In this document: positions 1,665 to 36,589 of the stretch, one piece after another
How the letters are laid out: each line of letters starts with the position of its first letter
Numbering within the stretch: position 1 is the stretch's first letter
Source: Chrysemys picta bellii
Lineage: Eukaryota
Length of the DNA stretch: 64,000 nucleotides
Reading direction: 5' to 3'
Assembly: GCF_011386835.1 (NCBI RefSeq)
Contig: NC_088808.1
Coordinates: 21,204,001-21,268,000 of the forward strand
The notes under the pieces: model-generated
Databases searched by the model: none
Told to the model about the DNA's origin: nothing
The model's input: the letters and a program-made list of their open reading frames with translations, nothing else
Translations under genes and position numbers: made by a program

Positions 1665-2339
1665 GTAGGATCATTATGGTTTTCCCCCCTAGTGTATTAG
1701 CTTGTTTTTTCTGATCCCTTGCTAGTTAGGACCAGACCTAATTAAACTCATGTTCTGTTTCGTTCCCAGACATTATAGCTAAATGCTAGTTTTAGCAATA
1801 CTCTGCATGTGTAGAGTACCTTTCAGTGGCTCTCAGACACCTCTGTATTGATACAGATTAGGGACTTGAGGCATAGAGACTTGTCCAACAACACTGGATA
1901 AGCCAATGGGAAAGTAGAATCCAAGCATCTTCCCTGCTCTAACCACTACATTTTGTTCATCCCATAAGATGTCCTTGGGTAGAACTGGTACTCGTTTAAC
2001 AGGAAGCAACAGGCTGTTCTGGAGGGGGTAGTGACATTAACAGCACTTTTAATTTCTTACTGGGTTTGTTTAACCAAAAGGACAGCAGTTTAACTTTACC
2101 CACATTGACAGTCTTGCAATAAATCCATATGTTTGCTTGTAATACCACTATCAAAAAAGTGATTGCCTTTGGAGCTTTTTACTCTCATAATTAAAGTATA
2201 GTTAGAATCTTTTTATATAACTATACATAAAACATAATTACTGTATAAAATTAGTACTCATAAAAGTGAGAGTAGCTACACAGCCAGAGATAGGTCAAAT
2301 GTTACCTACGCTGCTCTGACGGGTGCCTACAATTTTTAG

Positions 2340-2485
2340 TCCTAGGCGTCTACTGCCTAAAGACAGACAATTCTGCCAAATTGAATAGTGGTTTTGTAAC
2401 GTGGAGTAGCATAGAACCACTTTGCTCACTCATACTGACTTGTGACCTGCACTGGGATTTGAAGCAACATCTCTGGAAAGAGTAG
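2340..2485 (+). CDS. Terminal coding exon of the unidentified gene
   Basis: Acceptor aatttttag|, phase-1 start, (V)LGVYCLKTDNSAKLNSGFVTWSSIEPLCSLILTCDLHWDLKQHLWKE*, stop TAG at 2483-2485. Confidence 0.6.
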
Positions 2486-5250: not shown

Positions 5251-5589
5251 CAGGGGGTGCCCGGTATACGTCGGGGTTGCGTTCCTGAAAAGGGCAATGG
5301 ATACTGAAACGACAGATACTGGGCAATTTTTCCCCGTAAGAAATAGTGCCCCCCCTTCCCGCCCCGCCTCTTTCCGCCCCGTTCCACCCCCGCCTCTGAG
5401 CGCACCCTGTCCCTGCTCCTCCTTCTCCCCCTCCCTCCCAGCACCTCCTGCACACTGGGGGAAGCACCCAAAGAAAAGCCACGCAAAAGGTGAAGCGACG
5501 GATATATGATTCGGAACACGTTCCCCTATTGATGAGCAATGAATAGGCGAGACGACAGATAAGGGGAGACGTATACCAGGGACCCCCAG
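5251..5589. mobile_element. Tc1/mariner (Tigger-like) MITE
   Basis: Imperfect TIRs CAGGGGGTGCCCGGTATACGTC / GACGTATACCAGGGACCCCCAG with TA on both flanks; GC-rich interior. Confidence 0.75.
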
Positions 5590-7841
5590 TATAGCTAATA
5601 ATGGTACATGATCACAATATTGCTGCCACCTAACTGGAGTTTCAATGTCCGCTTCCAGAACTGGGGTTCACATTGGCATCAGGAAGTGAGCAGCTTTCCA
5701 GAAACTAACCTCATTCATTTACTACTGCAGCCCAACTCAACTCCGCATAGCAGCCAGCAGGATTAATCCAGGGTTCGGGACAGATCCTGACCCTTTCTTT
5801 AAGGACCGATACGATAATCGAATGGGAAACTGCATAGCCCAATGCAGCCCTGCACACCCGGCTTCTCAGGAAGATAGAGATGGATTTCCCAGCTGTGTTT
5901 ACATTTGAAATATAACCGGGCTAAGGCACAATGGAAGCCCAGGTCACAGGGTTCCCGTTAGACGTCGCTTGTCCACAGAAGGTTGGTGAAACACGTTCTG
6001 TGGCACGTGCTTGCAGCTTTCGGAGAAGGGTCAAAGAGGAGTTCGTTTTGTAAAACGTTCTGAAGGCGAAGAGCAAAGCTGTGATAATAAAGAAACAGCC
6101 TCCCTCTAGTTCAAACAAGTAGGTCATCCCCTCACCCTGGCTGTCCAACTAGGTTATGCCTCATGCAGGGTGGCAGGGACAGTGTTTTTTCATTTCTATG
6201 TATGGGAAGAGAAATAGATAAACCTGTGGGAGGTAACAGTGAGGATGAGTCAGAGGCAGCAGGGAAGGAGTGAAAGTAATTTTCTGGGGAGCTAATTAAT
6301 GCTGTTGGAAAATGCAGATTTCGAGCATGCCTCAGTTCTTTGGAACTGAATAACTATTCAGATAGGGATGGTTTCATTAACCTCACTAATTCTGGTGTAA
6401 TTAATTCCTGTGGGGGTTTATGGTGAAGCTTACCCAGATACCATATTGTCCTTTCTCCTCTCACAAGGAAGGAGCTAGTGTCTGACCATCGTGTTTGACG
6501 GGAGAAAGACGTGCCAGTCTCGTGCAAAGGGATTGGCGGGGGGGAGGGAGAATGGGGGGTCAGATGAGCTCTTGGCTCGAATAGCAGTACAAAGCTTTCC
6601 ACTAACTCTGAGCTTAATGCTGAGGCTTTGCTAGAAGGGAAGGCCAGCGGAACTGTTCCTTAGCTGGGCTCAGCGGGGCTTCCGATTTCAGCTAACTAAT
6701 GAGTGCAGCAGCGATCCAAGGAGATCTTTTCCGCCTCCCTAGGCACATGTTTTACAACATGAATTTCCAAAGCACCATTTACCTGCAGCGTGTCATTGAA
6801 GGAGAATGGGGGACAGGAAGCTCATATTTCTCCTGAGAGAGGAAGATTTGTTTCCTCAAAGTCATACTCCATGCCTGGACAGCAGCCTGGGGCATTCAGT
6901 CAGGTTAATCATGTCCACGAAAGTGACAGTGAAGCAGGTAGAGATTTTCTGTAGGGAGAAAAACCTCTGCCGCGGTCCCTGCACCAGTTCCACGCTGGGC
7001 CAATACTGCAAGGTTAGCCTCCCCCTGCTACACATTATCCAGCAGCCCCCACCCGGCAGGGACATGTATAGAGAGATGGATAGATATTCGCACACACTGG
7101 TAGTGATACATTAGGTTTTTGTTCCTGAAACATCTCCCTGCTTTTAAAAAAATCTGGCTCTTTGCGGAATCAGAATAGCGTTGAACCATAATAAAGCCAA
7201 GCGTGTTAAATAGCTGTTTGTATAAAAAGCACGAGGGGACATTTTTCCTTGTAAAAATTAAACAGAAGAGAAGAGGGGTGGGGGGAGGGGGCTCTTGAAG
7301 CGCTCCAGTCGGTATTATTTATTAGTTGTATCACAGTAGCACCAAGAGGCCCATGCCAAGATCAGGGGTTCCAACAGATAAGATGCTGAAGAGAAATTAA
7401 GTAACTTGACCGAGATCACACCAGAAAATTGTGGCAGAGCTGGGAACCAAGCCCAGAACTTGAGGACCAAGTCCAGAGCTTTAACCACGTGGCTCTTCTT
7501 CCTACCAAACAGCTACACTCCATACATGAGGAGATACACTGCAAAGGAAACTGCTAACACCACATCCTGGCATGATGATCAAAGCATGAACTCTTTAAAT
7601 GGAGGTTCACATTCAGATAACAAGATGACCCTGTGCTCTACAGTCCCCATGCATAAACTCCCCAGGTCTTATGGAATTTGCATAAGCACAAAAGGATTAA
7701 GTAAGGTACCATCCCATTCCCCATCTTATCCACTCTGCTGCTGCTCCCTTTCCTCCTCTCCGGCTTACACTACATCCCACAAAACCAGACTTCATCGTTA
7801 GTGTTCAGTGCAGCACAGGATGGTTGGAAAGTTCTCAGCTC

Positions 7842-7908
7842 CTAGATGGTCATTTTCAGCACAGCCACACCTCCACCAGCATGACTGGTCTTGGTATTTC
7901 CAAAGGGT
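7842..7908 (-). CDS. Kelch gene terminal exon
   Basis: Acceptor ttcttgttgcag|, (R)[21 protein letters not shown]; resembles the KLHL20 C-terminus GGGVGVIKMT. Confidence 0.85.
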
Positions 7909-10900
7909 CTGCAACAAGAAGAGGCCATAGGATATTACAGACTCTCTATTCAAGAACCTACGGGCCAGATCCTCAACCTGTGTAAAGTGAGAAACCTCAG
8001 CTCAGGTCAATGGAGCCGGGACTAGTCACAGCAACCGAGGACCTGGGCCTTCAGCGAGAATGGCACTCTCTGCTTGCTGTGATTTGTTCTGGGCAGCTAT
8101 TGAAATACGTGGCTCATGTCTGATTATTTCCCAAATTGGTTACAAAGTCCCTCACCTGAAACGTACTTTTCAGCTATGTGTTTTATCACAATCAACGTGG
8201 TGTCAAGGTGATGGTACGTCTGTCCTAAAACAGATTGCATCATTGTAATGTAGTGAGTCAGGATGGTGCTTCTATCTCACCCCGTTTTAAATGACCACTG
8301 GTGGCAAGGCCACGTTCCCATGCAGCTCACGTTTATGAGAGTTCATATTTGGCCCTTATAAGTAGCATCCAAAAACGGCTGCACTGCGCCAGGCTGTTCC
8401 CGTGAGTGGGACCCCAGAAAGGCCCACAGAGCGATGGCACACGGAGCGTGAAGCTTCCTCCAACGGCTGCAAGGGTCCACCTGGAACAAGGCTGAGGCCC
8501 ACTGGCGGGATGGTGTGCTGGGGAACCCTATGTGCCACTGCCCGTGCTGTACCTGTTCTGCACAGAGAAGACTCCAGGGTTCTTGTATTACGTGTCTTTC
8601 ATGACCACTAAAAATAATGACCCATGTGCATCGTGGGACTATTTTAAAATCCAGCGTGGATCCAACCAGCTCCAGATAGTTAATTAGTTTATTTGGAGCT
8701 AGTGTTGGGCCAGCTACAGGCTGTAATTAATTTTTTAATCTGTGGGTTGCAGGGTCATTAACCCCCGGGGTTTCTGGAGTGATTCAGATTAACAAACCCA
8801 GGCTGTAAATGCAATTGAGTGCATGCAAGGGCAGTTAATTGAGTAGCAAAGGCTGATTAAATAATCAATGCGGCATCGATTTACCTCCACTTGTTGGCAT
8901 CCAGGTCAAATCCTTCCACAGTGGTAACGTGCGTGACACCGTCGAACCCCCCGATGGCCAGTAGGTATCCATTGGCTGCAGCAGCTTTCACCTAAACACA
9001 GATCCATGGGTTTCAGAAATGAGGATGAAAGGAACAAATCAGGAGGGGCTTAAAACTAATCTGATCTCATGGGCTGAAGAGCTCTAGAATATTTTCACAC
9101 TGTGAGCAACAATAAATGGAAAGGGAGGGGACGAGACCCTGAAAACTGGGCTGTTTCCATCCTTAGAGACTCTTACAGCTGTTGATCTTCCGCATTACGA
9201 TTGTCAGTGCTGTGCCCAGGATCAGCATAGCAACGCGCTCTGGCTCTCTTGGTATCTTCGAGCCTCTCTGCCCGGAAAGAAAAGACATCATCCAAAAGCA
9301 GGCTTGGCAATTTGAAAAGGAAAACAAAACAGGCTTGGCATTTGCTAGGAGTAAATGGAGTTTAATATCCCAAACCAGTCAGCTCATGGAAAAAGGCACG
9401 GAAGTGACAAGGGCAGGGATTGGGATGGAGGAAAAGGGGCAGAATCTACTCGAAATCTGCCCACAGTGCCCGTGTAATCTGACATCTCTATTAAGATGAT
9501 CAGCAGTGAAATCGTTAACATCAGAACTACTGGCATTCAACTCCCTTGAGCAGAATAGGGCCGTTCATCCATCTCTTAGCACGGATATATCTAGTTGCAA
9601 CCTCAGCAAAGCAACCCTGCTTCTTCACAGACAGGTGGGCAGACCCTCTTGGGTCTGAAAAGGGAAGCTTAAATTCTGCAGAAGCTGATGAGAAGCCACC
9701 AGACAGTACCACTGAATGCCTGCCCAGCCCATCTTCTGATGACCCCGGATGCAGAGATGCCTCTTCCCTTCCCACCCCTCACTTTTCAGGGTTTTTTTTT
9801 TTAGATAATCAAATTCCAGCCGTTGTGTAGCTCTGTAATTGCAAAGAGGTTATGCTTCTTCGAAGGTGGCACTTTCAAACACAATTAACATGCAACTAGC
9901 CGAGAACGCTCAGAACGCGCTCATGAGGGTGATGCCGTGCCTATTTTCAGAACGACAAAGCCTCTCATCTTCGCTACAATACATTAATCAGAGTTCGTTT
10001 TACTTCATCATTGCATATGTTGCCATCAGCAGGGGAAGGGCAGAAGAGAAAATACACAGGAACAAATATCCTTTCCCCAGCAGGAAGAAAACCTCAAAGT
10101 AACCTCATTTGGCTGAGGTAACTAATACAAAAGAAATTTATAAATAATTAAACTCACAATATTTCTTGCTGCTTCTTCCTGGGCACTGTAATCCACACCC
10201 AACTCTTCAGTTGCATTTCCCATTGGGAACACATCCTACCTGCCCTCTGTGTCCCAAACTGGCTGACCATTGATCTCTGAATGAAATTTGAGAACTTGGG
10301 GTTTATCTGCACCCTGAATTATTTGGGTCCAGGTTACCTGAGCTACCATGTCTCCAAATTCAATGAGAGATGAGAAGGTGCTCTTGGTGAGGGGCAACCA
10401 ACTCTGGAATTCATTCCTCCAGCCCCCTTGGTATACAGACCAGATCTGGAGACCTTCAGATCATGCTGCACACCCTGTCTGTTTCCCCAGCCTTTTCCTG
10501 AGGAGGAGGGTATGTCTGGCAGGGTGGATGGAGGAGGAGGGGCGTCGGAGTTGGGTGACATTGATCCAGTTTTGTGTCTGTCTTCTTGTGTTAGTATTAC
10601 AATCGAATGGGCTGGAAACAGAGGTTCTGACTTTCTGTGTGGTCCTGAGCAAGTCAGTTCCCTGCTCTGTGCCTTGGTTTCTCCATCTGTTGCACTTAGG
10701 TTCCTATACTGTCCCATCACTGTGATGTGGGAGGAATAATGAACTAGACCCCATGGTAAAGCTCTACAGGACCCTTGGATGGAAGCTTGAGGCATGTAAA
10801 AGACTGTTCGCATGAAATACCTTATTCCTCTTTGATTTCATGGGCATCATCGGTGACCATTCATTGGTGACTGGATCGAACCGCTCAGCGCTACAGAGCT

Positions 10901-13900
10901 CCGTGAGGTCATCCCGGCCACCGAGAGCATAGATTTTCCCTTGGAATGTAGCACAGCCAAAATTCTCTCTGCAGGTGCCCAAGGGAGGGCAAGAGGACCA
11001 TGAATCCTCCTCAGGATTGTAACGTTCCACTGGGAGAGAAACCAGAAGAATCCTGGGTTCTAATCCCACCTCTGACCCTTGTGACCCTTTGGTAAATCTT
11101 GGATTTACTTCTGTGAGTTTGGGCCAATCGCTCCGTGCCTCAGTTTCCCCTGTATCCAACAGGGAAAATAAAACTCGCCTACCTCACAGGGGTGCTGTGA
11201 GGGCTGAGTCAATAATGGCTGCAAAATGCTTTGAAGATTAAAAGCACCCAATTGCTGAGCTTTGTTACTGATACACGAGAAGTTAATAAAAAAATTTCAC
11301 ACCCCCATGGATCAGACAGCCAGGAGGCTGCCCATCTTGGCCTTAGTTAATTGGATTGAACAGTGGAAAGGATTCATAATTGGGGAGCAGCAAAGGGTGG
11401 CTGGGTCTGAGCATGGGCAACATGGAACCATTCTCTGGCTCCATGCTGGAGGTGTCACTGGAGGGAAGGTGGGGATGGCGCAGGGGGCTCTGCTTGCTTG
11501 GGACAGCTTCCTCATTCTCTCCAGATGGCAGAGGGCTCCCTCTGCTTTGGGAGGGAAGGGAAGGGAAGGGAGGCAGAGCAGTGGAGAGAATCTAACCTGC
11601 CATAGAGCCCAAGGCCGAATATATTGGTGTGGGAATCGTACACTCATCTTAGACAGGAGCTCATCTTTGTGCCAATTTCACTCTTCCGTTACCTGAATAC
11701 AGCGGAGACTGGCCATCTGAGCCACCGATAGCATAGAGGTAGCCGTCTAGCACTGCCACCCCTAAGCCTGCACGGTGGCAGGTCATGGGTGCCATCCTGC
11801 ACCACCTGTTCCCACGAGGATCATACCTAAAGCCAGGGGGAGGCAGTCAGAAGCGCGGGAGAATGCCACGGACTGTCCCAGCTACGGCACACGAGAGCTG
11901 CTTTCCGGGCTAAGTTACGAGCAGGCTGTCTGGGATTCAGCCTGTCTCTATACAAGGCTCCCTGAGAACACAACACACCCGTTTCCACGCACAACCCTTA
12001 TCAGACAAGTCCCGTTCGCCCTCCTCGGTCCTTTGGCTGGTAGATCTGGGCCCTTTCACAAATCAAAACGTGCGAACTGAGTGCTGGCGAAAGGAGTCAG
12101 ATTGAAGAGGCCTGGAGACTGAAGCCCTCCGTCTACAGAACAGGCTCCGATCAGACACTGGCAGCGCGAGCTTCGCCCGCACTCCCCCGTCCAATGCTCC
12201 GCACCCTGACAAGAGAGCAGGCCGCTGGCCATCTTGTGAATTACAAACCAGAAACCTCCAGGTCCTGGCTCCCCTGCTTGGCAGAGCCGGGGTGCCTCAT
12301 GCCTGTGGAGGGTGTCAAGGCAACATTGGCACCTCTCTCCATATTAAACAAAAGCTCTCGACCCAAGACGGCAACCTCGGTGGCTGTAACTAACCTCAGT
12401 GGTTCACTATGAATGCAGATATTGGCAGTCCTACGGAGCACAGTCCATGAAAGTGATGTGCATCCGCACACGGGTTACGATACCTTTCCACCGTGCTGAG
12501 GCATACGATCCCATCACGGCCTCCTACACAGTACAGATAGCCTCCCAGCTCCGCTATGCCCATGTCTCGTTTGCCTTCGCTCAGGGGAGCCACGTCACGT
12601 CTCCATTCCTGCGTCATGGGGTCGTACCTTGTGCAGGGCGAAGAAAGTTTTTTTGGGGTTTTTTTTTTTTTTTAAAGGTGACAAGGTGGCAAACGTCTCA
12701 CATGCCGTGCGAGGAAAGATGGGGTTAGAAACGACACATTCAAGACTAATTAGTGCCTGAGTTTGGACTCTGTTTTCAGACGGGAGCGAGTCTCTTGCAC
12801 TGACTATTCTGAGCACTGTGTAGGTGCCTGCATGGAATGGGAATTCAAGAGGAAGGATGGCCTTGGGATCAACGCCCTAGACTGGGAGATGTGAGTTCAA
12901 TTCCCAGCCCTGCCACAGACTTCCTGTGTGACCCTGGGCAAATCCCTTCAGCTCTCTGTGCCTCAGTTTTAGATCTGAAAAACAGGGTTGGTGAGAATGA
13001 CGAAATCAGTACAGCTTGCGAAGGGCTTGGGTACTGTGCTGATTGGGAGATGGTCACATGTGTACATGAAGCAGCCAGTCAGTAGGTGTCCATCTCTTTG
13101 CTATGCATACAGCAACGTTTTCCACAGGGAATGTAATGTTTGTTTTAACATGTGCTGGGTATATTGCTGTCCCTAACAGTGCATCTATAATGCAGGCAGT
13201 GTTCCCTAGTGGTCAGGCCTGGGCATATTACTTAACCTTTCTGTGCCTCAGTTTCCCCATCTGTAAAATGGGGGATATGATACTGACTTCCTTTATAAAG
13301 TGCTTTTAGATCTGCTGATGAAAAGCCCTTTACAAGAGCTAGGTGGTATTCTTTTATCAACAAAGCTCAGTTTTATTAATTTAAAAATTCTTAATTTAAG
13401 AAATGATCCTGTATTTAAAATAGGATACTTACATGGAATATAGATTTAATAGCATATGGGATGGATCTAATTTAAGGCAATGAGGAGGAAATTAGGGTGC
13501 AAAGTGGGATGCTTGGTATGTTGTTCAAATTAACATAAGAAGTAGAAAACTCTCACTGTATATCACTAGGTGGGCTGGTTTTTTGGCAAACTGATATCTC
13601 AAAAAGGAGACAGCCCATCAGGAATAAACTCACCTTAAGGGTTTTGCAGCCTTGGAAAGACAATTTAACACATTTCTCACATGCTAGCACTCTCTCAATT
13701 CAACTTATATTTAGCAATGTGTTTCAAAAGCTGAATGTAGCACTTATGGAATGAGCAGAGGGCTTACAGTAGTCTTTACCAAGCGGTAACTGGTTGTCAA
13801 CGCTGTCATTAAACTCAAGTAGTAACTACAACCACCACAGATATGAGGGAGATTCTCCATGCCCAAGAACCCTGTATGCAAAGTGCAGTTAAATGCGAGG

Positions 13901-16900
13901 CATGCGGTTATAAAAGCATGTTGTCAGCTCAGCCCTAGCCACTCATTAAACAGAAGAAATATCTCCTTTGTATATTACCAATCTCAAACTCACTTGTCTT
14001 TCATATGTCAGCACTTTTTATTAATGATACATTAAAAAAAAGTCTTCAATGTCCATTAAAAATAATTCTAAAGATTGCAAGAGAAAGACAAATTTTGTAC
14101 AAATTCAGTTAATTAAGCCATCTCCTTCCACTGTCTCCAACCCAGCTGGAGAACTGTGTGTTCAGAACTGTTTAGAGAGGCGGTGTCACAGTTCTAAGTA
14201 AGGAGTTTACACCTTTGCTGACTGCAAGTGGAATCATTTTTCACTGTCTAGTGTATTTATCACCACTGTTCTAAAATGTAGCAAACAGCTTCAGACATGT
14301 CACTTTCTAAGTCCATTCCACCTACTGGTTCTTATCCACTAGCAACATGCTGCAAAGTTTGGGCGGCAAGCACTGCAGGGGGAAATAGATTGATTTTTAA
14401 TGATCTATATGCCCCGTGGGAAGCAGGGGCGGCTCTATGCTTTTTGCCGCCCCAAGCACGGCAGTCAGGCGGCCTTCGGCGGCATGCCTGCAGGCGGTCC
14501 ATGGTCACACGGATTCAGCGGCCTTTCTGCGGGTGATCTTCTGGTGCCACGGCTTCAGCGTACCCACCGCCCGAATTGCTGCCGAAACCACGGGACTGGC
14601 GGACCTCCCGCAGGCACGCCGCTGAAGGCCGCCTGACTGCCACCCTCACAGCGACTGGCAGGCCGCCCCCCCGCGGCTTGCCGCCCCAGGCACGCGCTTG
14701 CTGCGCTGGTGCCCGGAGCCGCCCCTGTTGGGAAGTCGCTTAGTTTCTCTGTGACTCAGCTCCCCATAGGTAAATGGCAATAGCCCCTTCTTTCCCCTCC
14801 CCTTTGTCTGTCTTGTCTAGTTCGATTGTCAATTCTTTGAGCATGGACTGTCTATTACTATGTGCATACTTAGTGCATGTGGGCCCCCGATCTCAGTGAG
14901 TGCTCTAAGCACCATTGTAATACAAATAGATAAAAAGGGGCCGTGTAGACATACCCGAGGTGCAAAGGGATTGCTCCAACACTGCAGCATATTAATGAGC
15001 CAACCCAGTTGTTGTTAGTGGATGATTACTCAGTCCCAGAAATAAGGTGAAACAGAGTAAAGGCTTTAGAGTTCCAGGGCAATTACATATAGCAGCTAAC
15101 ACCTTCCTGCCTGAGCCAAAACAACTTTCAAATATTACATCGAAACTCCACTTTGCAGGAGGAGCATTCTAAGAGATTCCGGTTCCATCTCCCTAATCCT
15201 GAGAACCACCACAAGTGCCTCAGGCCTTTAGTTAACTTGTGGGAATTGAGGTTGTTCAGGCTCCAGACTGGCCTGACTTTTGTCCATTTCACAGATTAAA
15301 GTTCCCTCTCATTTCCATTAATCTTAATGGGATCAAAGTCTTTCCATTAACGCTAAAGGCTTTTCACTTTTGCAAGCTGAAAAGCAAGATGATATTGTTA
15401 TAAAAAGCATGTGAGTTGTATGCTCCATTAGTCTGAACCCTGGATTTGCATGAGAGATTTCAAAACTATCTAATCCTCAGAAGCCAACACTATTTGTATC
15501 ATACTAGAACAGTTATTTTACCCTTCAGCACTCATTTCTGCTCTTCCTCAGATTTCTAACTGACTAGCTCTGCCAGACTATTTAGATAAACAGAATCGCC
15601 ACATTCTAAGAGCTCAACATGTGATTCCTAGCATCATCTTTCAGCTTTGAGAAAGAGACATTTGAGAACTGAGAAATGAACTGTACTTTAACTTCTGGTT
15701 TTCTCTCAGTCAATTGGGATGAAGCCTCTTTACAGAGAGTGAAAAATATAGAAGCCAGCCAGGAAGAACCAAATTAATGTTTGAATTTCTACCTGACAGC
15801 AATTCACTTTGATGCATTGCATACTAAGATTTTTGGGACTGCTAAATAGAGTTAAAATAAATAGCAGAGAGTGAAAGGAAGAGTTAAGACACTCAGATGT
15901 GTGTTTATTTTATATTTTAGTAAAAAAAGACGGTGACTTCAAACCAACAGATGACTTGGAATGTCATTTAGTGCCTGTTTTGTCTGAGAGCAACACCGTT
16001 TTCGTTTCTAATTTGCAGCAGGATTTGAATTCATGACCTGTAGGGACAGACCCAAATCAAACCCTCAGATCTGAAAGTTCCACCACATTTGGGTCTGTCT
16101 GGATCAGAACTTTGTGGATGGACCCCATTTGTGAAAGGGGCTGAACCAAGAGTCAAGCATCTCTCAAACTTTGGGAAAGCTCGGGACCAAATCTGGATCT
16201 GAACTCTGTGGCTCAAGGTTGTCTCCTTCCTGATGTACAAACATCTTGGGTCACATTTTCAAAAAGGGGCAGCCTTCCATTTTCTGGCATAATGGACACC
16301 TGCCTTTTTCCACATGCAGGTGCACTGTGGATGGCAGCCCGAGTGCTTCCTCTGCCTACCGACCACAGGGTCAGGTGCCAGCAGGGAATGCAAGATGTAC
16401 ATAGCCTGGTTTGCACCAGAAATTCATTTGCAGAATTATAGGGGCAAAATCTGCAGGGGGCCATTTGTACCTGCAAAAACAAACACAAGGCTTCAGCCCT
16501 TTGATACATTCTTTTGTGCCTAACACAGCAGATTTTCTGTTGCACAGACAAGTTTAAAATGTCTTAACCCTGCAGAATCCAAAGTTTCCCAGTCCTTCTG
16601 TTCTACTCGTCTGTTTCATAGCACAGGACTTCTGCGGGATGCAGGGTTACCTCTCCACGCTACTGAGGCAGGTTGTGCCATCATAGCCACCGACTGCATA
16701 GATGAAGTCATGAAGAGGAGCCACACCCACACCACAGCGATGTCTAGAGACAGGTCCCAGCACTTTCCATTCATGCTCCAGGGGGTTATAACATTCCACA
16801 CCACCGATATGGTCACTGCGGAGCCAGCCTCCAACTGGAAAGAGAGACATGGCACAACAGGAGCAGGAGAAATAGGACCGAAGAGGATTAAACCGTCAAG

Positions 16901-19900
16901 CCCTGCATTGTAATGGATTTCCCACCCTATGTTTCACTTCCCTTTCCTCCCCCTCCCCACCTCAAAGCTCGCGCCAGCATGCCGACCAATCACAGTACGG
17001 ACTATGAACATCGCATCCAAACCACTGCAGTGCCGATCTGCCAATCCACGCTCTCCAGTCCAAGTGAGTTGACTCTGAACGTACAGCATGCAATGCACTT
17101 CACACTCAACCTGTTACTGACAGCTATCAACAGGGCACATACAGAACACACACACACACACCAGTTCTCCATCGGGGGCTCCCCCAGACATTTTTCACCC
17201 AATGCACCACAGGGCTCCCTGCCTTCCCCACCTGGCCAGCTCCCCTGAGCAAGCACTCTTCGCCTCTCCCAATACTTGTAGGCTGAGGCTGTCTCTGAGT
17301 GACTCCTGTGGGCAGACCAGAGGGGACACTGGCTGCTGGAAGTGGGGGGAGGCCGGGCAGGAGCCCTGGTGCAGGAGCTGGCCCCACGGCAGAGGCGAGG
17401 AGCAGCAGTGCTGGCCACCCCACTGCCCTCTCAGATTTAGCCCAACGGCTCTCCATCATGATGGGAGGCAGCAGGGCCAAAATGGAGTGAGTGTGGTTGT
17501 GATCTGGTGCACGGGAGTTGCAGCGTGGCTCTGGTTTGGCCCCATCATGATGGAGGGGCCAGGGGCCAAACCTGAGGGGCTCTGTGACCCCCGTGCACCT
17601 GGTCGCAATGCCACTCGCTGAATTTTGGTCCTGCCACCCCATCACAATGGGCCAATGGTACGCAGCACGGGTACAGCTGCAGGGGCCACTGTTCTCCATT
17701 TCTGAATGCACAGCTTGACCTCTTGGTCACCTAGCTTTCTTATGCATTTACAACATGCCCATCGCCATGGTATCTAGGCTCCCCATGCACAGCTTTAAAA
17801 CTTATTGTCATCAAAGGGGCCTCATTGGCTCCCAAAGGTGTTGCTGTTGTTCATAGCGGTCGTGGGGATAGATATATCATCACCCAGGAAAATAAACCAT
17901 CACCTAAAAACTCCACAACACTAAAATTCTCTTTCCCAAATTAAACCAATTACTGATGCCTCAGTGGGGAAAAGCATAGAGGCAATAATACTGCTTTGAT
18001 CTGGGGCTTTGGGGTGGGTTTTGCTGACGGTTATTTTGGCTCCCATCTAGACAGCCAGGGACAATTCAAAGACAGGTAGGAACCATTGTCAGTTTATTGA
18101 TTTTTTACATCTACAGCATTTTCCGATGGGCCATCAGCAGCTGTTTATTGACAGGCCTGAAGCAGCATCTTCACTTGGGTGATTAAATTTCTATTGCAGT
18201 AACTATTTGGAATGATTACTACAATCACAAGGCAATTTAAAATAAATGATTTCACCACCGAGTACTGCAAACACCACATTGAGCATAATTGGAACCAATT
18301 GCAACCGGGAAGATTCAGTCGTGAGTTTGATTATTAATGTTTTATAAATACATAAGTTGCAGTGTCAATATTTTTTTTCATGGAAATGGTTTTGATGCTA
18401 CTCTGCATTTGCTCAATAAGTAGTTTAGCAGGGGGTGGAACTTCTGCAAGGAGGAGCAAAGGTTTTCAGAATATATTCTGATTTTTTTTTTAAATGGGAA
18501 AAGATTTTCCTATTAGCTGCTTATTTTTAACGACAGAATTTTCATGCTGATTGCCAGCTTGCCAAGGTACAAAGTGAAACGTCTCTCACCATTAGGAATG
18601 TTTTTAAGATTGAGCTGTGAAGTGCAGCCATGATACATCCAACTCAGCTGTATCTAAAGAGTATTTAGAACTAGGAAATCTCCACTTTCAAGTGGACCTT
18701 CATTGAAACGATATAGCTGTTGCCTACACTTTGCCTCCTCTCAGAAAACCAAGGGGAAATGTTACATTACTAAACTTTTTACCCCCTTTTGTGCTATGAG
18801 CCATCTCTCCATTCTGGAACCTGGGACACAGACAACTCTTAGAGCAGAAGAATTAGCTAGATGGAGAGAGAGTATCTTCCTGAAACCCTATTCTTTACGG
18901 TCCTTCATTTAGGATTAAAATATCTCCCCAAGAGATGTTACAGGTCCCTGTGTGCAGCGATCTGGGCATTACCCACCTACTGGGGGATGTGTTACATCAA
19001 TCAAGAAAAAACACAACCGTTCAGGCAACATCACAAGCCCACTCCTGAAGTTCCTAAATAGGCAAACTCACCTGCAAACCAACTCCACCGGCACACTAAT
19101 TGCACACAAGTGTTGCCTTGCAGTTAGATAAGCAGCATGAACACATTCAGTGCTTACAGAAGTTAGACACAGGACTAGGGTTACCATATGTCCGTTTTTT
19201 CCCGGACATGTCCGGCTTTTTGGCAATCAAACCCCCGGCCGGGGGGAATTGCCAAAAAGCCAAACATGTCCGGGAAAAATACCGGCCGGGCACTTCCTCT
19301 CTCGCAGCTGCTCTGCTCCTCCCCGGACTCAGACTTCGGCTCTGTTTAAGAGCCAAGCTGCCCGAGCCAGCGCTACCGGCTTCGGGCAGCCCCCATGCCT
19401 CCGGACCCCAGCCGCTGGAGCAGAGCAGCTGGAGCTGGGGAGGAGAAGTGCCCGGCCGGGGGCGCAGGGTCCGGAGGCATAGGGGCTGCCCGAAGCCCGA
19501 GTGCTACCGGCTTCATGGTTTGCCGGGCAGCCTCCAGACCCTGCGCCCCCGGCTGGGCGCTTCCCCTCCCGGGCTCCAGCTGCGCTGGGGAAGCGCCGGC
19601 CGGGGGCGCAGGGTCTGGAGGCTGCCAGGCAAACCGTAAAGCCAGTAGCGCTCGGGCAGCCCTTTTCGCGTGGCTGGGAGGGAGGAGGGGGAGTTAGGGC
19701 GGGGACTTTGGGGAAGGGGCGGGGAAAGGGTGGAGTTGGGGCGGGGCTGGGGTGGGAAAGGGGCGGGGCTAGGGCCCATGGAGTGTCCTCTTTTTTTATT
19801 TTTTAAATATGGTAACCCTACGCAGGACTGACCTACCTGAGCTTTAGATCAACAGTTGAGCTCTGGATCCAAAATCACCCCAGAATTTGGGGAGCTCCAA

Positions 19901-22708
19901 AGCCAGATCCACTCTGAATGCACCCACAGTTGAGATGATGTTTATTTTTACATGCCAAGAACAATGCTGGGTGCCTGACAGTGCAAGTGGCTGCATCAGG
20001 TCCCTTCCCTTACAAGCTCACAATCCAAACGGAGACAATGTTGGGATTCAGGCCTGCAGGCACCAGAAACCCATTCTGTGGCCTTAGATAAATCAACACT
20101 CTGTGCCTCAGTTTCCCCAGGAAAACAAACACCCAACTCCTCCAGGAGGGCAGGGGGAGTACTAGTTAGGTCAGAGAATCATAGAAGTGTCGGACTGGAA
20201 GGGACCTTGAGAGGTCATCTTGTCCAGTCCTCTGCACTCCAGGCAGGACTATGTAATAACTAGACCATTCCTGACAGGTGTTTGTCTAACTTCTTCTTAA
20301 AAACCTCCAGTGACAGAGATTTCGCCACTTCCCTAGGCAATTTGTTCCTGTCAGGGTAGTTAAGCACTGGAAGTTTTTCGTGGCTATGGAGAACTTTGGA
20401 CATGAAAAGCAGTAATAATATTTAGTACCAAGTATGATTATCTACAATGCAGATTATGAGCCACATTAGTCCCTGGTGCTATATTTGTAGAGTTAGGGAT
20501 ATACACACACTAAGATAGAAACCCCTTTCCTTATGGCACCCCGGGTCCCTATACTACCTTTTCTTCTATAACGGGGGTGGCCAACCTGTGGCTCCGGAGC
20601 CGCATGCGGCTCTTCAGAGGTTAAAATGCGTCTCCTTGCATAGGCACCGACTCCGAGGCTGGAGCTACAGATGCTGACTTTCTAATTGCTGTGGGGTGCT
20701 CACTGCTCAACCCCCTGCTTTGCCCCAGGTCCTGCCACCACTCCATCCCTTCCCCCAAGGCTCCTGCCCCTTCCCCCGAGCCTGCCATGCCCTCGCTCCT
20801 TCCCCTTCCCCACCAGAGCCTCCTGCGCACTGCAAAACAGCTGATTGCAGTGGGCAGGAGGCGTGGGGAAGGAAGGGGAGGTGCTGATTGGCGGGGCTGC
20901 CGGTGGGCAGCGGATGGGGGGCTGCTGACGTATTACTGTGGCTCTCTGGCAATGTTCACTGGTAAATTCTGGCTCCTTCTCAGGCTGGTTGGCCGCCCCC
21001 ATTCTAGAACTTAGGATATTTAGGACTCAGTTCAGCACCATTGACTCTGGTGGGAGTTGGATCAGGCTCTTAGAATACAAGGTCCTTTCCCACTCTCAGA
21101 AATGCTGTACTCTGTAGCCTCACACTGACACCTCACGCTACGTGCTCAGCTCTGGCTCTACTCCAGGGCTCTTCTGCCTTTGTATGTTTAAGGCCTTCCC
21201 AAAACACCGTGGCCGACTCAACGCATCTCAGACAAATTCAACAGAAACGGAGACAGGACAAACTTACCAGCAAAAATGAGCTCGACTTGCCTGCTTGCTT
21301 TGTAAGCTCCAGACTGAGAGTCCTGGGTAGTCGGTTTCCTTTGCAATTCAAGCTGCTCCCTGAGGCAATGCAAATTCCGCAGTCACAACATTATCCCAGA
21401 ACAGCTCTGCAATGGGGACAGGGCACTACCACATCCTGGGGAAACTTTAGTGCGGGGCAAGCACACAATACAGGAGAGCTAACATAGCATTAGGAGACCT
21501 TCAAAACAGCTGCTGCATCATCCATTCTGATACAGCTTTAAGAACAAACAAACAACCCTAATGATCCAGAGAGGGACTTAAAGTGTCTTGCAGGATCCAG
21601 GAGGGAGAACTTCTCTGAGGACTGTAGATTTGGGTTTATTTTTTATTTCACTGGCTTCATTTGCAGATGGTGAGTTTTGGAGTCAAGTGCCCTCTCACAG
21701 ACCGAGCAAACAGAAATCCATGAAAATCCCTGACCTGGACAACGAAGCCTGCATCACAAATGTTGCTGAGGGGTGAGCTTTGTCAAGTTTGAGGTTTTCT
21801 GAACCTAAAGCTCTTTTCAGGATTGTGAAATGAATTAAGAGTTTGAGTTCCTTTTTACCCTTTCTAGAAAACTCACTATGGTATTTAGTAAGGATGAAAC
21901 TAATATGGTTTAATAATTTATGGAAATTTAACAGGGGTCTGTTAAAAACCTGTTATGTCTGTTCAAAAACATATAGAACTGTATAGAAAATGAGATCCTT
22001 CCTAGAGAATTCTAAAGCAGGGAGATCATTCGCTTTCAACCATCCGATAGCATTTTAATGGAGGCCTCTAAAAAGGTTCCCATTCTCTGTTGTTCCACAG
22101 GACTTTAACATGTCTTCTTCAGTCTTGTAAACGAATCTCTCTTGTCCTCCCTTTCCAAAAAGGGGTTTGATATTTTTAAAAAACTTTTTTTTAAAACAAA
22201 AAGGAAGGCCGGTTTTTGTAGTAAGGGAGAGAAGAATCTTCCCCAACCCCAAAACTAGGTTTGTATGAATGAAGGCCTTATAGAACACTATATAGACTGC
22301 ATTGGTTACCTGCTCCCTTCGTCACAACTGTTCTGTAGTTTGTCACTCAGCCCCCGTCTTCAGTTCATTTTTCACCCTGTTTTTCCACTGATTTTTCCCC
22401 TCTAATCCTAAGCAGAAATAGGAACCCAACAAAATTCAAACCCAAGACAAACTTTCAAACAGTGTGTGTGAGTGGCTTCAAATTTACCCCAGGTGAGTTT
22501 ATTCTACTATCGCTTAAAACACCAGAGCCTTTCAAATGTGCAGAGCTGTAGTAAGTGGGGTCAGAAGAGAAGATTATTGGGGGGGGGGGGAAGGGTTATG
22601 GCTGCTTTAAAGGCAAGTATTGAAGTCAAATTAAAAATGTCCAAATTGTGTGCTCCTCTCCCACATTAGCCTTTCATAAAATGTACGGTACTCACCCTTT
22701 GTCTTCAT
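7842..22708 (-). CDS. KLHL20/diablo-like Kelch-repeat gene lacking visible BTB/BACK; about 348 aa if the G5 frameshift is corrected
   Basis: Hand-spliced join (minus): 22708-22696, 22407-22310, 21359-21268, 16834-16651, 12627-12484, 11826-11693, 11029-10821, 8991-8885, 7908-7842. All introns GT-AG. Six complete GG-x-Y-x-W kelch blades. The last seven exons are high confidence, the first two are inferred. Confidence 0.8.
8885..8991 (-). CDS. Kelch gene exon, blade 6 (107 nt)
   Basis: [36 protein letters not shown]; tttag| ... AG|gtaaat. Confidence 0.92.
10821..11029 (-). CDS. Kelch gene exon, blades 4-5 (209 nt)
   Basis: [70 protein letters not shown]; ctctcccag| ... AAG|gtattt. Confidence 0.95.
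11050..11240 (+). mobile_element. CORE/MIR-like SINE fragment
   Basis: Core motif gtgcctcagtttcccc followed by ctacctcacaggggtgctgtgagg. Similar fragments lie at about 10590-10740, 12855-12970, 20095-20170, 24580-24800, 28255-28390, 48640-48800(-), 51120-51260(-), 51740-51840, 60120-60320 and 61960-62060. Boundaries approximate. Confidence 0.65.
11693..11826 (-). CDS. Kelch gene exon, blades 3-4 (134 nt)
   Basis: [44 protein letters not shown]; ctttag| ... CAG|gtaacg. Confidence 0.95.
12484..12627 (-). CDS. Kelch gene exon, blades 2-3 (144 nt)
   Basis: [48 protein letters not shown]; cacaag| ... AG|gtatcg. Confidence 0.95.
13196..13350 (+). mobile_element. tRNA-derived CORE/MIR-like SINE
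   Basis: ggcagtgttccctagtgg ... tctgtgcctcagtttccccatctgtaaaatggggga ... ataaagtgcttttagatct. Confidence 0.7.
14424..14727. mobile_element. hAT MITE
   Basis: TIR CAGGGGCGGCTC / GAGCCGCCCCTG; 8-bp TSD gtgggaag / ttgggaag. Confidence 0.85.
16651..16834 (-). CDS. Kelch gene exon, blades 1-2 (184 nt)
   Basis: (V)[61 protein letters not shown]; ctttccag| ... AG|gtaacc. Confidence 0.95.
19176..19820. mobile_element. hAT non-autonomous DNA transposon
   Basis: TIR TAGGGTTACCATAT / ATATGGTAACCCTA; 8-bp TSD cacaggac / cgcaggac; GC-rich internal direct and inverted repeats. Confidence 0.9.
20174..20350 (-). mobile_element. CR1 LINE 3' end fragment
   Basis: Reverse complement of the CR1 3' UTR (gaatcatagaa tail, ggaagggacc, tagaccattcctgacaggtgtttgtctaac); same sequence as the + strand CR1 near 63950. 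Confidence 0.85.
20572..21001. mobile_element. hAT MITE (family A, copy 1)
   Basis: TIR cgggggtggccaacc / ggttggccgccccca; TSD ttctataa / ttctagaa. Confidence 0.85.
21268..21359 (-). CDS. Kelch gene linker exon (92 nt)
   Basis: [30 protein letters not shown] with strong donor G|gtaagt; joins the next exon as ELIFA|VGGW, like KLHL20 EVLFA|VGGW. Confidence 0.8.
22310..22407 (-). CDS. Putative Kelch gene N-terminal exon with an apparent +1 frameshift
   Basis: Acceptor atttctgcttag|, donor CAG|gtaacc. 98 nt where 97 is needed. Removing one G from the G5 run (22351-22355) gives [33 protein letters not shown]. Confidence 0.5.
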
Positions 22709-22788
22709 ACACACCCATCCCTGAGCACTGAAGGAGCTCCTAGCACAAAGAAGAGGGTTGTGTTGACCACATCTAGTCCAGATGGAGC
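22696..22788 (-). CDS. Putative Kelch gene start exon (ATG at 22708-22706)
   Basis: Acceptor gtctctag|, ATG AAG ACA AAG G|gtgagt (strong phase-1 donor), compatible with the next exon. Confidence 0.45.
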
Positions 22789-35057: not shown

Positions 35058-35482
35058 AAATGTCACAAAGATTCTGCTGCATAAAGCTTTTAAAATTATC
35101 CAATTTATGCTGGAGCACATTGTGTAATCTCTTGGTCATTAGGAAAACTGACACCAATAAATTAGACCAAATTCAGAAAATATTAACATGTTAATGTATG
35201 TTGCTACCATTTCCATATGCTGAACAGAGTAGGCCTGACAGACAAATGGGCTTATCACACTTTTCATCCATGGATCTTTTAGCCCTTCACAAAATATGGG
35301 CATCATTCTCTATTTCACAAATGGGGAAAGTAAAGACCAGAGAGGAAACGTAATTTGTCCAGAATAGCAGAGCAGAGCAGAGAAACAGAACCAGGATGTC
35401 CTGGTTCCACATCAGCCCGGTATCATCTGAAATGACTACCTCTAATTATAAAGGCAGAAGTGAACGTCTATCTCTTCTCCAG

Positions 35483-36589
35483 GTGATGTTCTGCAGGCTT
35501 CGGACACATCAGTGGTGTTTTATTATATTCAACATCATGCTTTTCCATGCTTTGCTGTTTGGAGGAGATTTGCTGGAGGAATACTTTCTACATTCGCTAC
35601 CGGTCACCTACACTGACATGAAAATTCTCAAAATCAGGGAGAAGGCCAGGAAATTAGACATGGATCCCCTAAAGACCAATATGTCCAAATCTTACATCAT
35701 CAGCAGTTCAGAGGTGTGCTCAGATCAAGAGGTATTTCTGCTTGTTATTGTGTGCAGCAGCCCAGAAAACAGCACAAGGCGCAACCTGATCAGACGAACA
35801 TGGGGTAATGTGACAGGCATCAGGGGGTACGCTGTGCTTGTTTTGTTTGCTTTAGGAAAGACAGCTTCAGAAGCCATCCAGTTAGACATCAGTGAAGAGT
35901 CTCAAAAGCATGGAGACATCATTGAAGGAAACTTCCTTGATTCTTTTGAGAATCAGACACTGAAGACTGTGATGAGCATGGAGTGGACAGTAACATTCTG
36001 TTCCACCGCAAGGTTTATTCTCAAAACCAATGAAGAAATGTTTGTCAACATTCCGAGTTTGGCTGAATACTTGCTTAGCTTAAGAACACATCTCGAGGAT
36101 ATTTATATTGGAAAGGTCATTCATCACGATATGCCTGACAGAGACCCTCAAAGCCAGAGCTTTGTTTCTCTCAGTCAATACCAAGAAGAGTATTACCCAG
36201 ATTACTGTAGTGGAACGGCTTTTGTCATTTCCCAGGATGTTGCTCGGAAGATATACATTGTTGCCAAGGAAACACCAGTTTTGGTTCCTCCCGATGTCTT
36301 TGTTGGAATCTGTGCTAAGAACGCTGGCATCATACCCATTCAAAGTTCTAGATTTTCTGGGAAAAAGCACATTAGATACAATCGATGTTGCTACAAATTC
36401 ATTTTCACCTCTTCCGAAATGAAAGATGAGCTATTTAAAGAATGGAGGGAGATAAGTGATGGAAAAGACTGCACTTTACTGGAAACTTATTATGGGCTGG
36501 TGTCCTGCAGAGTCTTGACCTACTTTGACAAGTTTAAACATTTTAACATGGAAACAATAAAAAATGAGGCTTTGCATTTTACCAACTAA
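35483..36589 (+). CDS. B3GALT9: Beta-1,3-galactosyltransferase 9, main exon (about 370 aa with MQ)
   Basis: Type II TM segment, GT31 motifs (RRNLIRRTWG, YPDYCSGTAF), C-terminus YNRCCYKFIFTSS; adjacent to PSMD5 as in human. Confidence 0.95.
   Translation: MMFCRLRTHQWCFIIFNIMLFHALLFGGDLLEEYFLHSLPVTYTDMKILKIREKARKLDMDPLKTNMSKSYIISSSEVCSDQEVFLLVIVCSSPENSTRRNLIRRTWGNVTGIRGYAVLVLFALGKTASEAIQLDISEESQKHGDIIEGNFLDSFENQTLKTVMSMEWTVTFCSTARFILKTNEEMFVNIPSLAEYLLSLRTHLEDIYIGKVIHHDMPDRDPQSQSFVSLSQYQEEYYPDYCSGTAFVISQDVARKIYIVAKETPVLVPPDVFVGICAKNAGIIPIQSSRFSGKKHIRYNRCCYKFIFTSSEMKDELFKEWREISDGKDCTLLETYYGLVSCRVLTYFDKFKHFNMETIKNEALHFTN

What the first reader, a model, noticed from the sequence alone, without database searches (positions are those of the whole stretch)
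7842..22788. Kelch-only paralogue of KLHL20/diablo with no BTB-BACK module
Seen: six intact kelch blades over exons of 184/144/134/209/107/67 nt with perfect GT-AG phases, preceded by a linker exon ending ELIFA. Upstream of this there are only two short hydrophilic candidate exons starting at an ATG, and no ORF between 22.8 and 34 kb resembles a BTB domain. Knowledge: as recalled, KLHL20 has the same exon phases and motifs (RRCGVGV, VGG-D-G-S-P-L, GGRDD-TEL-SAER, GGGVGVIKMT), and it needs BTB/3-box to bind CUL3. Inference: the product could be a substrate-binding propeller that cannot recruit CUL3, i.e. a decoy or scaffold that shields substrates from ubiquitylation. The strongest candidate for an undescribed system in this window.
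Basis: partly seen in the sequence, partly recalled or inferred. Interest (0 to 1): 0.78.

Follow-up and report, generated by a model that had tools for sequence, protein, structure and literature searches.

The report
Expressed kelch-only paralogue of KLHL20
This turtle window holds an intact, spliced and expressed gene for a 319-residue six-bladed kelch propeller that descends from KLHL20 but has no CUL3-binding half. The same gene exists from ray-finned fishes to an opossum under the misleading automatic name "KLHL20", and I found no paper on it.

Summary
On the minus strand, eight GT-AG exons (22718 down to 7842) encode a 319-aa protein: a 38-residue N-terminal tail and six intact kelch blades.

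**No BTB-BACK module**
- Full-length KLHL20, KLHL17, KLHL18 and KEAP1 queries find no BTB or BACK anywhere in the 64 kb.
- The upstream space is closed off by a galactosyltransferase ORF (35.4 kb) and PSMD5 (40.8-49.3 kb).
- Spliced RNA contigs join exon 1 to exon 2 and exon 2 to the first kelch exon exactly as predicted.
- An in-frame TAG lies 24 nt before the ATG, so the reading frame cannot extend upstream.

**Conserved family**
- Kelch-only orthologues form a well-supported clade in teleosts, sturgeon, bichir, a caecilian, squamates, a gharial and an opossum.
- They share the start MGVY(N/E)... The galactosyltransferase upstream recurs in rattlesnake, gharial and flatback turtle, and a KCNT1-type channel gene downstream in rattlesnake and pike.
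- dN/dS is 0.09-0.30. The window's own lineage has 9 nonsynonymous and 11 synonymous changes (p = 0.002 against neutrality).
- Sea turtles have lost the first kelch exon, and the gharial carries a frameshift.

**Mechanism**
Seven of the 11 KLHL20 residues that contact DAPK1, invariant from Hydra to shark, are changed here, several to residues conserved within the new clade. The likeliest reading is a CUL3-independent binding propeller with its own ligand.

Databases annotate the family, but I found no literature on it.

The parts
22696..22718 (-). Coding part of exon 1: ATG (22718-22716), MGVYEDK plus 2 nt of a Gly codon, donor gtgagt. The exon extends 5' to at least 22751 in RNA.
   Evidence: Sequence. 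An RNA contig in run X1 joins 22696 to 21359 and runs to about 22751-22757 before Illumina adapter. The same exon is found in Natator and Eretmochelys (MGVYEDK), Gavialis (MGIYEDK) and Crotalus (MGVYKER). Fish and caecilian orthologues start MGVYNEQG / MGVQHERG.
22740..22742 (-). In-frame TAG, 24 nt upstream of the ATG and inside the transcribed 5' UTR. It excludes any N-terminal extension through this exon.
   Evidence: Sequence. The X1 contig covers it.
21268..21359 (-). Exon 2, the linker: [30 protein letters not shown]. It is a relic of the stretch between BACK and the first blade of KLHL20.
   Evidence: Acceptor cctcag and donor gtaagt. RNA joints 21359/22696 (X1) and 21268/16834 (X4, X9). 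The linker aligns with KLHL20 ...[30 protein letters not shown], most clearly in the sturgeon orthologue.
16651..16834 (-). Kelch exon K1 (blade 1 and the start of blade 2)
   Evidence: tblastn maps it to KLHL20 residues ~295-372. The RNA joint to exon 2 is. It is deleted in sea turtles.
12484..12627 (-). Kelch exon K2
11693..11826 (-). Kelch exon K3
10821..11029 (-). Kelch exon K4
   Evidence: Its best natural PDB match is the KLHL20 kelch domain.
8885..8991 (-). Kelch exon K5
7842..7908 (-). Kelch exon K6: the closing strand ...[11 protein letters not shown] and the TAG stop (7844-7842). No sequence follows the propeller.
   Evidence: The region is 95% identical at protein level in Natator.
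35396..36589 (+). Neighbour that bounds the upstream space: a single-exon galactosyltransferase ORF (B3GNT-like, 397 aa) on the opposite strand
   Evidence: Pfam Galactosyl_T, E = 2e-41. A Galactosyl_T gene sits in the same place in Crotalus, Gavialis and Natator.
40795..49313 (-). Neighbour: PSMD5 on the same strand, ending upstream of the kelch gene
   Evidence: ORF translations. Pfam Proteasom_PSMB, E = 1.8e-32 and 1.9e-25 on two exons. The order is the same in Crotalus.

Best explanation
The locus is a functional, expressed gene for a free-standing six-bladed kelch beta-propeller of 319 aa, with a 38-residue, mostly disordered N-terminal tail. It descends from a duplicate of KLHL20 that lost its BTB and BACK exons before ray-finned fishes and tetrapods diverged, and gained a new start (MGVY...) in what was the end of the BACK/linker region. 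Shown here: the architecture, the splicing, the expression, the purifying selection, and the conserved clade and synteny. Inferred: with no BTB/3-box and no other cullin-box it cannot dock on CUL3 or dimerise, so it acts as a CUL3-independent binding module. The ligand pocket on its top face has been remodelled relative to KLHL20, and the new residues are conserved within the clade (E for K498, P for L592, C for Y378, N for H499). It therefore most likely binds its own partner or partners, sequestering or scaffolding them rather than ubiquitylating them, and does not compete for KLHL20's LPDLV-type degrons. Some lineages can do without it: it is broken in sea turtles and probably in the gharial, and I know of no eutherian counterpart.
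For: The gene model is intact with canonical splice sites.
No BTB or BACK is found in the window.
Six orthologues carry only kelch Pfam families at E<=1, while the KLHL20 control scores BTB at 9e-33 and BACK at 4e-38.
Spliced RNA contigs give the joints 21359/22696 (X1) and 16834/21268 (X4, X9) with GT..AG ends, adapter-terminated contigs, and an 801-nt multi-exon contig in X4. An in-frame TAG precedes the ATG.
The kelch-only clade has 100/98 support, and the tetrapod subclade, including the opossum XP_007475408.1, has 100/100.
The N-terminus is conserved.
The order PSMD5, GalT, kelch gene, KCNT1-type channel is seen in Crotalus, and kelch gene then KCNT1-type channel in pike. PSMD5 and GalT are in the window.
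dN/dS is 0.09 against Gekko, 0.11 against Crotalus, 0.20 against Gavialis and 0.30 against Natator. The window lineage has 11 synonymous and 9 nonsynonymous changes, p = 0.0017 against neutrality.
All six blades keep the GG doublet, and no BC-box-like motif is present.
An AlphaFold model of the sturgeon orthologue (pLDDT 85) superposes on the human KLHL20 kelch domain 6GY5 at TM 0.96 and 1.5 A; residues 13-38 are disordered.
At the 11 DAPK1-contact positions, KLHL20 is invariant from Hydra to shark, the window protein keeps 4, and the clade has its own conserved residues.
Against: No protein-level or binding data exist.
The RNA evidence comes from assembled contigs of coded runs whose tissue is unknown, with one contig per joint per run.
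The gene has been lost or broken in close relatives: both sea turtles share a 2-kb deletion of K1 and carry K5 frameshifts, and Gavialis has a 7-nt deletion in K4. Constraint is therefore not universal, and dN/dS of 0.3 among turtles is only moderate.
The clade evolves much faster than KLHL20: about 45-70% identity within the clade against 95% between shark and teleost KLHL20.
The contact-residue test covers one degron (DAPK1); other KLHL20 substrates may bind differently.
Confidence: 0.7

Rival explanations
1. Decoy for KLHL20: the propeller binds the same degrons as KLHL20 and protects those substrates from CUL3-KLHL20 ubiquitylation.
For: KLHL20 is its closest relative. The kelch domains are 53% identical, KLHL20 is the best PDB match, and the protein has no way to recruit CUL3. 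W326, C356, G423 and R515 are kept in the window protein.
Against: Seven of the 11 DAPK1-contact residues differ in the window protein: H373Y, Y378C, Q421R, K498E, H499N, Y567H and L592A. K498, which forms the salt bridge to the degron's aspartate (PMC6720452), is a glutamate throughout the clade, a charge reversal. KLHL20 keeps all 11 from Hydra to shark.
Confidence: 0.1
2. An expressed but functionally decaying gene: it is transcribed in this species but on its way to loss, as in sea turtles.
For: Both sea turtles share the K1 deletion and carry K5 frameshifts, and Gavialis has a K4 frameshift. Turtle-turtle dN/dS is 0.30-0.44. The clade evolves fast.
Against: In the window all eight exons, all splice sites and all six GG/W blade signatures are intact. 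The window's own lineage shows an excess of synonymous change (11 S to 9 N, p = 0.0017). The spliced mRNA contigs have sizeable word depth (58-254).
Confidence: 0.12
3. An ordinary BTB-BACK-kelch gene whose 5' exons were missed.
For: This is the default expectation for a KLHL-like kelch domain. Exon 2 keeps a faint relic of the BACK-kelch linker.
Against: No BTB or BACK hit occurs anywhere in the 64 kb. The upstream space is closed by the GalT ORF and PSMD5; in Crotalus only 3 kb separates GalT from the kelch gene. RNA contigs splice exon 1 to exon 2 to K1, and exon 1 carries an in-frame stop before its ATG. All orthologues are kelch-only.
Confidence: 0.02
4. Part of the KCNT1 transcription unit: an upstream ORF or alternative first-exon product whose conservation reflects regulation of the channel gene downstream.
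For: The kelch gene sits about 5 kb upstream of a KCNT1-type gene on the same strand in pike and rattlesnake. NCBI labels the stickleback protein 'kcnt1b isoform X21'.
Against: The protein sequence itself is under purifying selection. It has its own stop and a complete fold. No KCNT1-like exon was found in window 1-7800.
Confidence: 0.05

Closest known systems
KLHL20 / Drosophila diablo (BTB-BACK-kelch substrate adaptor of CUL3)
   Same: It has the same six-bladed kelch propeller. The kelch domains are 53% identical, the blades are collinear, and the model superposes on 6GY5 at 1.5 A. The C-terminal closing strand GGGV.V.KMT is shared, and the clade falls within or beside the KLHL20 group in the tree.
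   Different: It has no BTB, BACK or 3-box, so no CUL3 docking or dimerisation. The degron pocket is remodelled, keeping 4 of 11 contact residues. It evolves far faster than KLHL20.
Predicted kelch-only proteins named 'kelch-like protein 20' or 'diablo' in databases (XP_039183079.1 Crotalus, XP_033817553.1 Geotrypetes, XP_019366375.1 Gavialis, XP_007475408.1 Monodelphis, XP_064165726.1 Anguilla, XP_040052284.2 Gasterosteus)
   Same: These are orthologues. They form one clade with the window protein (100/98), share the MGVY... start and the kelch-only build, and have the same neighbours where these could be read.
   Different: None in kind. The window copy appears not to have been predicted in turtles as a complete protein: only partial Natator and Eretmochelys fragments surfaced.
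KLHDC2 / KLHDC3 / KLHDC10 (kelch-only substrate receptors of CUL2)
   Same: They are kelch propellers without a BTB domain.
   Different: As I recall, those proteins carry a C-terminal BC/Cul2 box that links them to a cullin. Here the protein ends with the last propeller strand, and no BC-box-like motif is present. They are not close in sequence: none appeared among the listed hits.

Membership tests
BTB-BACK-kelch (KLHL) CUL3 adaptors | N-terminal BTB/POZ domain | tested here: not met
   tblastn of 9 full-length KLHL/KEAP1 proteins against the whole window gives no credible hit for residues 1-290 at E<=10. Pfam finds no BTB in six orthologues at E<=1, while the KLHL20 control scores 8.9e-33.
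BTB-BACK-kelch (KLHL) CUL3 adaptors | BACK domain with the 3-box that contacts CUL3 | tested here: not met
   The same searches apply; the control scores BACK at 3.5e-38. Only a short relic of the linker after BACK is recognisable.
BTB-BACK-kelch (KLHL) CUL3 adaptors | Six kelch repeats forming a closed propeller | tested here: met
   Kelch_1 hits on each of K1-K5. There are six GG doublets and the closing strand is present. The orthologue model matches 6GY5 at TM 0.96.
BTB-BACK-kelch (KLHL) CUL3 adaptors | Physical binding to CUL3 | not testable with these tools
   This needs co-immunoprecipitation or pull-down.
KLHL20/diablo orthogroup | Kelch domain nearest to KLHL20 among kelch proteins | tested here: met
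   The nearest full-length relatives are KLHL20/diablo at about 50% identity. The tree groups them at 100/100. KLHL20 is the top PDB match.
KLHL20/diablo orthogroup | Conserved degron pocket (W326, C356, H373, Y378, Q421, G423, K498, H499, R515, Y567, L592; PMC6720452) | tested here: not met
   KLHL20 from Hydra to shark keeps 11 of 11; the window protein keeps 4 of 11.
Kelch-only KLHL20-derived clade (unnamed) | Forms one clade with the kelch-only proteins of fishes, a caecilian, squamates, a gharial and an opossum | tested here: met
   IQ-TREE support is 100/98 for the clade and 100/100 for the tetrapod part.
Kelch-only KLHL20-derived clade (unnamed) | Conserved start MG(V/I)Y.. on a tiny first coding exon, followed by the linker exon | tested here: met
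   The exon 1 to exon 2 joint is seen in RNA.
Kelch-only KLHL20-derived clade (unnamed) | Position between PSMD5/galactosyltransferase and a KCNT1-type channel gene | tested here: inconclusive
   PSMD5 and GalT are present in the window in the expected order, as in Crotalus. No KCNT1-like exon was detected in window 1-7800; it may lie beyond the window.
KLHDC-type CUL2 receptors | BC-box/Cul2-box after the propeller | tested here: not met
   The protein ends at the closing strand. A regular-expression scan finds no BC-box-like motif.
Pseudogene | Disabling mutations, dN/dS near 1, no spliced transcript | tested here: not met
   The ORF and splice sites are intact. dN/dS is 0.09-0.30 and the window lineage gives p = 0.0017. 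Spliced contigs exist. The criteria are met in Natator and Eretmochelys.

The most novel reading that the evidence does not exclude
An ancient BTB-less duplicate of the CUL3 adaptor KLHL20, possibly a whole-genome-duplication copy, has been kept for over 400 million years in bony vertebrates as a free propeller with its own conserved ligand pocket. It stays next to the KCNT1 (Slack) channel gene and has been lost repeatedly (sea turtles, probably the gharial, apparently eutherians). It would be a cullin-independent regulator, for instance a sequestering or scaffolding partner of a specific protein, perhaps tied to KCNT1, in a family thought to work only through CUL3.
Probability: 0.35. Interest if true: 0.7.

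Novelty: new variant of a known kind. Interest (0 to 1): 0.55.

Why it matters
BTB-kelch proteins are understood as CUL3 substrate adaptors. This is a natural, long-conserved derivative that keeps the substrate-binding propeller, discards the ligase-docking half, and has re-tuned its pocket. It shows that the propeller can have a selectable, cullin-independent role, and it offers a tractable fish or reptile model for what that role is.

It also matters for annotation. The family is labelled 'kelch-like protein 20', 'diablo' or even 'kcnt1b isoform' in public databases. That can mislead orthology tables and KLHL20 studies in non-mammalian vertebrates.

Tried and rejected
**Searches that led nowhere**
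- The exhaustive representative search with the single 69-aa exon K4 was swamped by giant multi-kelch proteins. Only the few short hits with high identity (P0149, P0125, P0081) were useful.
- The look-up of encoding contigs had no record for the caecilian (P0125) or opossum (P0275) proteins, so their neighbourhoods could not be read.
- tblastx of the Crotalus and pike KCNT1-like 5' regions against window 1-7800 found nothing.
- Earlier scan notes had nothing for this place. Two notes on other kelch genes elsewhere in the genome did not bear on this one.
- Three literature searches for a BTB-less KLHL20 paralogue found nothing relevant; one search gave only the KLHL20-DAPK1 structure paper that I used.

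**Ideas considered and rejected**
- I first suspected from memory that the motifs belonged to KLHL17 or KLHL3 rather than KLHL20.
- Low-stringency tblastn hits for K1 in sea turtles and for K6 in Gavialis were not collinear, so I masked them before the dN/dS work.
- The N-terminal MG... does not fit the PROSITE myristoylation pattern as I recall it (residue 6 is D or E), so I make no lipidation claim.

**Steps not taken**
- The spliced window protein could not be handed to the fold or search tools by reference, so the sturgeon orthologue was folded instead.
- One hit list contained a human protein (P0311). I did not fetch, compare or search it.
- The third word search, which could have mapped birds, monotremes and eutherians, was not run because of its cost. 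Absence from those groups is therefore not shown.
Full report
**Observation**

The kelch exons are on the minus strand.
- K1 16651-16834
- K2 12484-12627
- K3 11693-11826
- K4 10821-11029
- K5 8885-8991
- K6 7842-7908, ending in TAG

Their phases chain without a break. Each of K1-K5 passes the Pfam Kelch_1 cut-off on its own. The linker exon ending ELIFA is 21268-21359, with acceptor cctcag and donor gtaagt.

One more coding exon lies upstream, at 22696-22718. It reads ATG GGT GTG TAT GAA GAC AAA GG followed by gtgagt. Joined, the eight exons give a 960-nt reading frame and a 319-aa protein. That protein has a 38-residue N-terminal tail and six blades, each with its GG doublet and tryptophan, and it ends with the propeller's closing strand [11 protein letters not shown].

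**Is there a BTB-BACK module?**

I ran tblastn of nine full-length BTB-kelch proteins (six KLHL20, plus KLHL17, KEAP1 and KLHL18) against the whole 64 kb at E<=10. The kelch exons match, collinear with KLHL20 residues ~295-590. Nothing credible matches the first ~290 residues on either strand.

The space upstream is closed. A single-exon galactosyltransferase ORF lies on the opposite strand at 35396-36589 (Pfam 2e-41). PSMD5 lies on the same strand at about 40.8-49.3 kb.

**RNA evidence**

Public runs holding this stretch were laid on 16780-22779. The results:
- A contig in run X1 joins 21359 to 22696.
- Contigs in X4 and X9, from two further studies, one of them on another organism label, join 16834 to 21268.
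- Both joints have CT..AC ends on the plus strand, which is GT..AG on the gene's strand, at exactly the predicted borders.
- The X4 contig is 801 nt long. Only 93 nt of it lie on exon 2, so it runs on through several kelch exons.
- Its other end reads the last 11 nt of exon 1 and then Illumina adapter.
- The X1 contig runs about 35-40 nt upstream of the ATG and then into adapter.

These are therefore spliced cDNA. Inside the covered 5' UTR there is a TAG (22742-22740) in frame with the ATG. Even an unseen upstream exon could not extend the protein. No joint to anything further upstream was seen.

**Relatives**

A search of 1.8 billion representatives with exon K4 was dominated by giant multi-kelch proteins. 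It did surface three short, closer proteins. Two word searches named them and found more:
- rattlesnake XP_039183079.1
- *Gekko kuhli*
- gharial XP_019366375.1
- caecilian XP_033817553.1
- opossum XP_007475408.1
- bichir and sturgeon
- many teleosts of 331-369 aa, such as eel XP_064165726.1, pike, and stickleback XP_040052284.2

All are named 'kelch-like protein 20', 'diablo' or, in stickleback, 'kcnt1b isoform X21'. Fragments from two sea turtles also appeared. None has a BTB or BACK Pfam hit even at E<=1, while a shark KLHL20 control scores both strongly.

The fish proteins all begin MGVYNEQG or a close variant, and the caecilian begins MGVQHERG-EQLALEKKP. The window's [17 protein letters not shown] is the same start. 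The first exon is also present in Natator, Eretmochelys, Gavialis (MGIYEDK) and Crotalus (MGVYKER).

A maximum-likelihood tree of the kelch domains puts all kelch-only proteins in one clade (100/98). The window protein sits in a tetrapod subclade (100/100) that includes the opossum. The clade lies inside or beside the KLHL20/diablo group (100/100), and its exact position relative to vertebrate KLHL20 is unresolved.

The gene's neighbours are conserved. Crotalus has the order PSMD5, galactosyltransferase, kelch gene, KCNT1-type channel. Pike has the kelch gene followed by a KCNT1-type channel. Gavialis and Natator have the galactosyltransferase upstream.

From my own knowledge of human gene positions, KLHL20 and KCNT2 both lie on 1q, and PSMD5 and KCNT1 both lie on 9q. 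This suggests a whole-genome-duplication pair. That is inference and was not tested here.

**Selection and losses**

Codon alignments built exon by exon give these dN/dS values for the window copy:

| Compared with | dN/dS |
|---|---|
| Gekko | 0.09 |
| Crotalus | 0.11 |
| Gavialis | 0.20 |
| Natator | 0.30 |
| Eretmochelys | 0.34 |

I polarised the turtle differences with outgroups. The window's own lineage has 11 synonymous and 9 nonsynonymous changes, where neutrality predicts 77% nonsynonymous (p = 0.0017). The sea-turtle stem has 6 and 8.

The two sea turtles share a clean 2-kb deletion that removes K1, with identical breakpoints (window 17666/15660). They also carry different frameshifting expansions of a G-run in K5. 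Eretmochelys has in addition lost 15 nt of K3 and two GG doublets. The gharial assembly has a 7-nt deletion in K4. The gene is thus dispensable in some lineages but intact and constrained here.

**Mechanism**

An AlphaFold model of the complete sturgeon orthologue has mean pLDDT 85, with residues 13-38 disordered. It superposes on the human KLHL20 kelch domain 6GY5 at TM 0.96 and 1.5 A.

The KLHL20-DAPK1 structure paper (PMC6720452) names the contact residues: W326, C356, H373, Y378, Q421, G423, K498, H499, R515, Y567 and L592. I fixed the numbering with an offset that matched 11 of 11 in shark KLHL20. All 11 are invariant in KLHL20 from Hydra to shark.

The window protein keeps only W, C, G and R. 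The clade has its own preferred residues at several positions:
- E at 498 in every member, reversing the charge that pairs with the degron's aspartate
- P at 592 in 85%
- C at 378 in 73%
- N at 499 in 64%

No BC-box-like motif is present and no sequence follows the propeller.

The protein therefore cannot reach CUL3 by any recognisable element. It probably does not read KLHL20's LPDLV-type degron. It appears to have a conserved pocket of its own. I conclude it is a cullin-independent binding propeller, sequestering or scaffolding a partner that remains unknown. The pure 'KLHL20 decoy' reading is possible but less likely.

**Novelty**

The proteins are in public databases under borrowed names. 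Three full-text searches found no paper describing a BTB-less KLHL20 paralogue. Kelch-only proteins as such are known (the KLHDC family). What is new is a long-conserved truncated derivative of a CUL3 adaptor with a remodelled pocket.

**Limits**
- The tissue of expression is unknown.
- The evidence comes from contigs, not reads.
- Absence from birds and eutherians is not shown.
- A human protein in one hit list was left untouched.

Noticed in passing
window 40795-49313, minus strand: PSMD5 (26S proteasome non-ATPase subunit 5) spans about 8.5 kb in many exons. Its first coding exon (MAEEALELL...) sits in a 61% GC island at 48-50 kb.
   Followed up: partly
window 35396-36589, plus strand: A single-exon 397-aa galactosyltransferase ORF (B3GNT-like, Pfam Galactosyl_T 2e-41) lies divergent from the kelch gene. 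It is conserved at this position in Crotalus, Gavialis and Natator.
   Followed up: partly
window 19180-21000 (intron 2 of the kelch gene): Hundreds of short RNA contigs at 90-95% likeness pile up here, with word depth in the thousands and many loose ends. These look like interspersed repeats expressed from elsewhere, not part of the gene.
   Followed up: no
L001 (Natator depressus) 18352/18353 and 24783-24800; L005 (Eretmochelys imbricata) 5668/5669, 9222-9224, 12094-12108: The sea-turtle copies are pseudogenes. They share a 2-kb deletion of kelch exon K1 with identical breakpoints. Each has a different G-run expansion that shifts the frame in K5. Eretmochelys also has a 15-nt deletion in K3.
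   Followed up: yes
L004 (Gavialis gangeticus) about 22300: A 7-nt deletion in the IYALGG motif of K4 shifts the frame. The locus also holds 10 kb of N, so an assembly error cannot be excluded.
   Followed up: partly
L002 (Crotalus tigris) 21992 onward; L006 (Esox lucius) 23992 onward: A KCNT1-type (Slo-like) potassium channel gene starts about 5 kb downstream of the kelch-only gene on the same strand in a snake and a teleost. NCBI calls the stickleback kelch-only protein 'kcnt1b isoform X21'. This may reflect read-through or shared regulation.
   Followed up: partly
window 21330: RNA contigs of X1 and X4 read A where the window has G. This is the second base of codon 18, Thr to Ile, in the unconserved linker. 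It is an allele or a species difference.
   Followed up: no
window 22770-22772: An upstream ATG opens a 10-codon ORF that ends at the TAG at 22740-22742. It lies at or just beyond the 5' end of the RNA contig, so it may not be transcribed.
   Followed up: no
window 52100-53240: A GC-rich stretch (55%) has long overlapping ORFs on both strands and no obvious coding signal. It may be a CpG island or the promoter of a gene beyond PSMD5.
   Followed up: no
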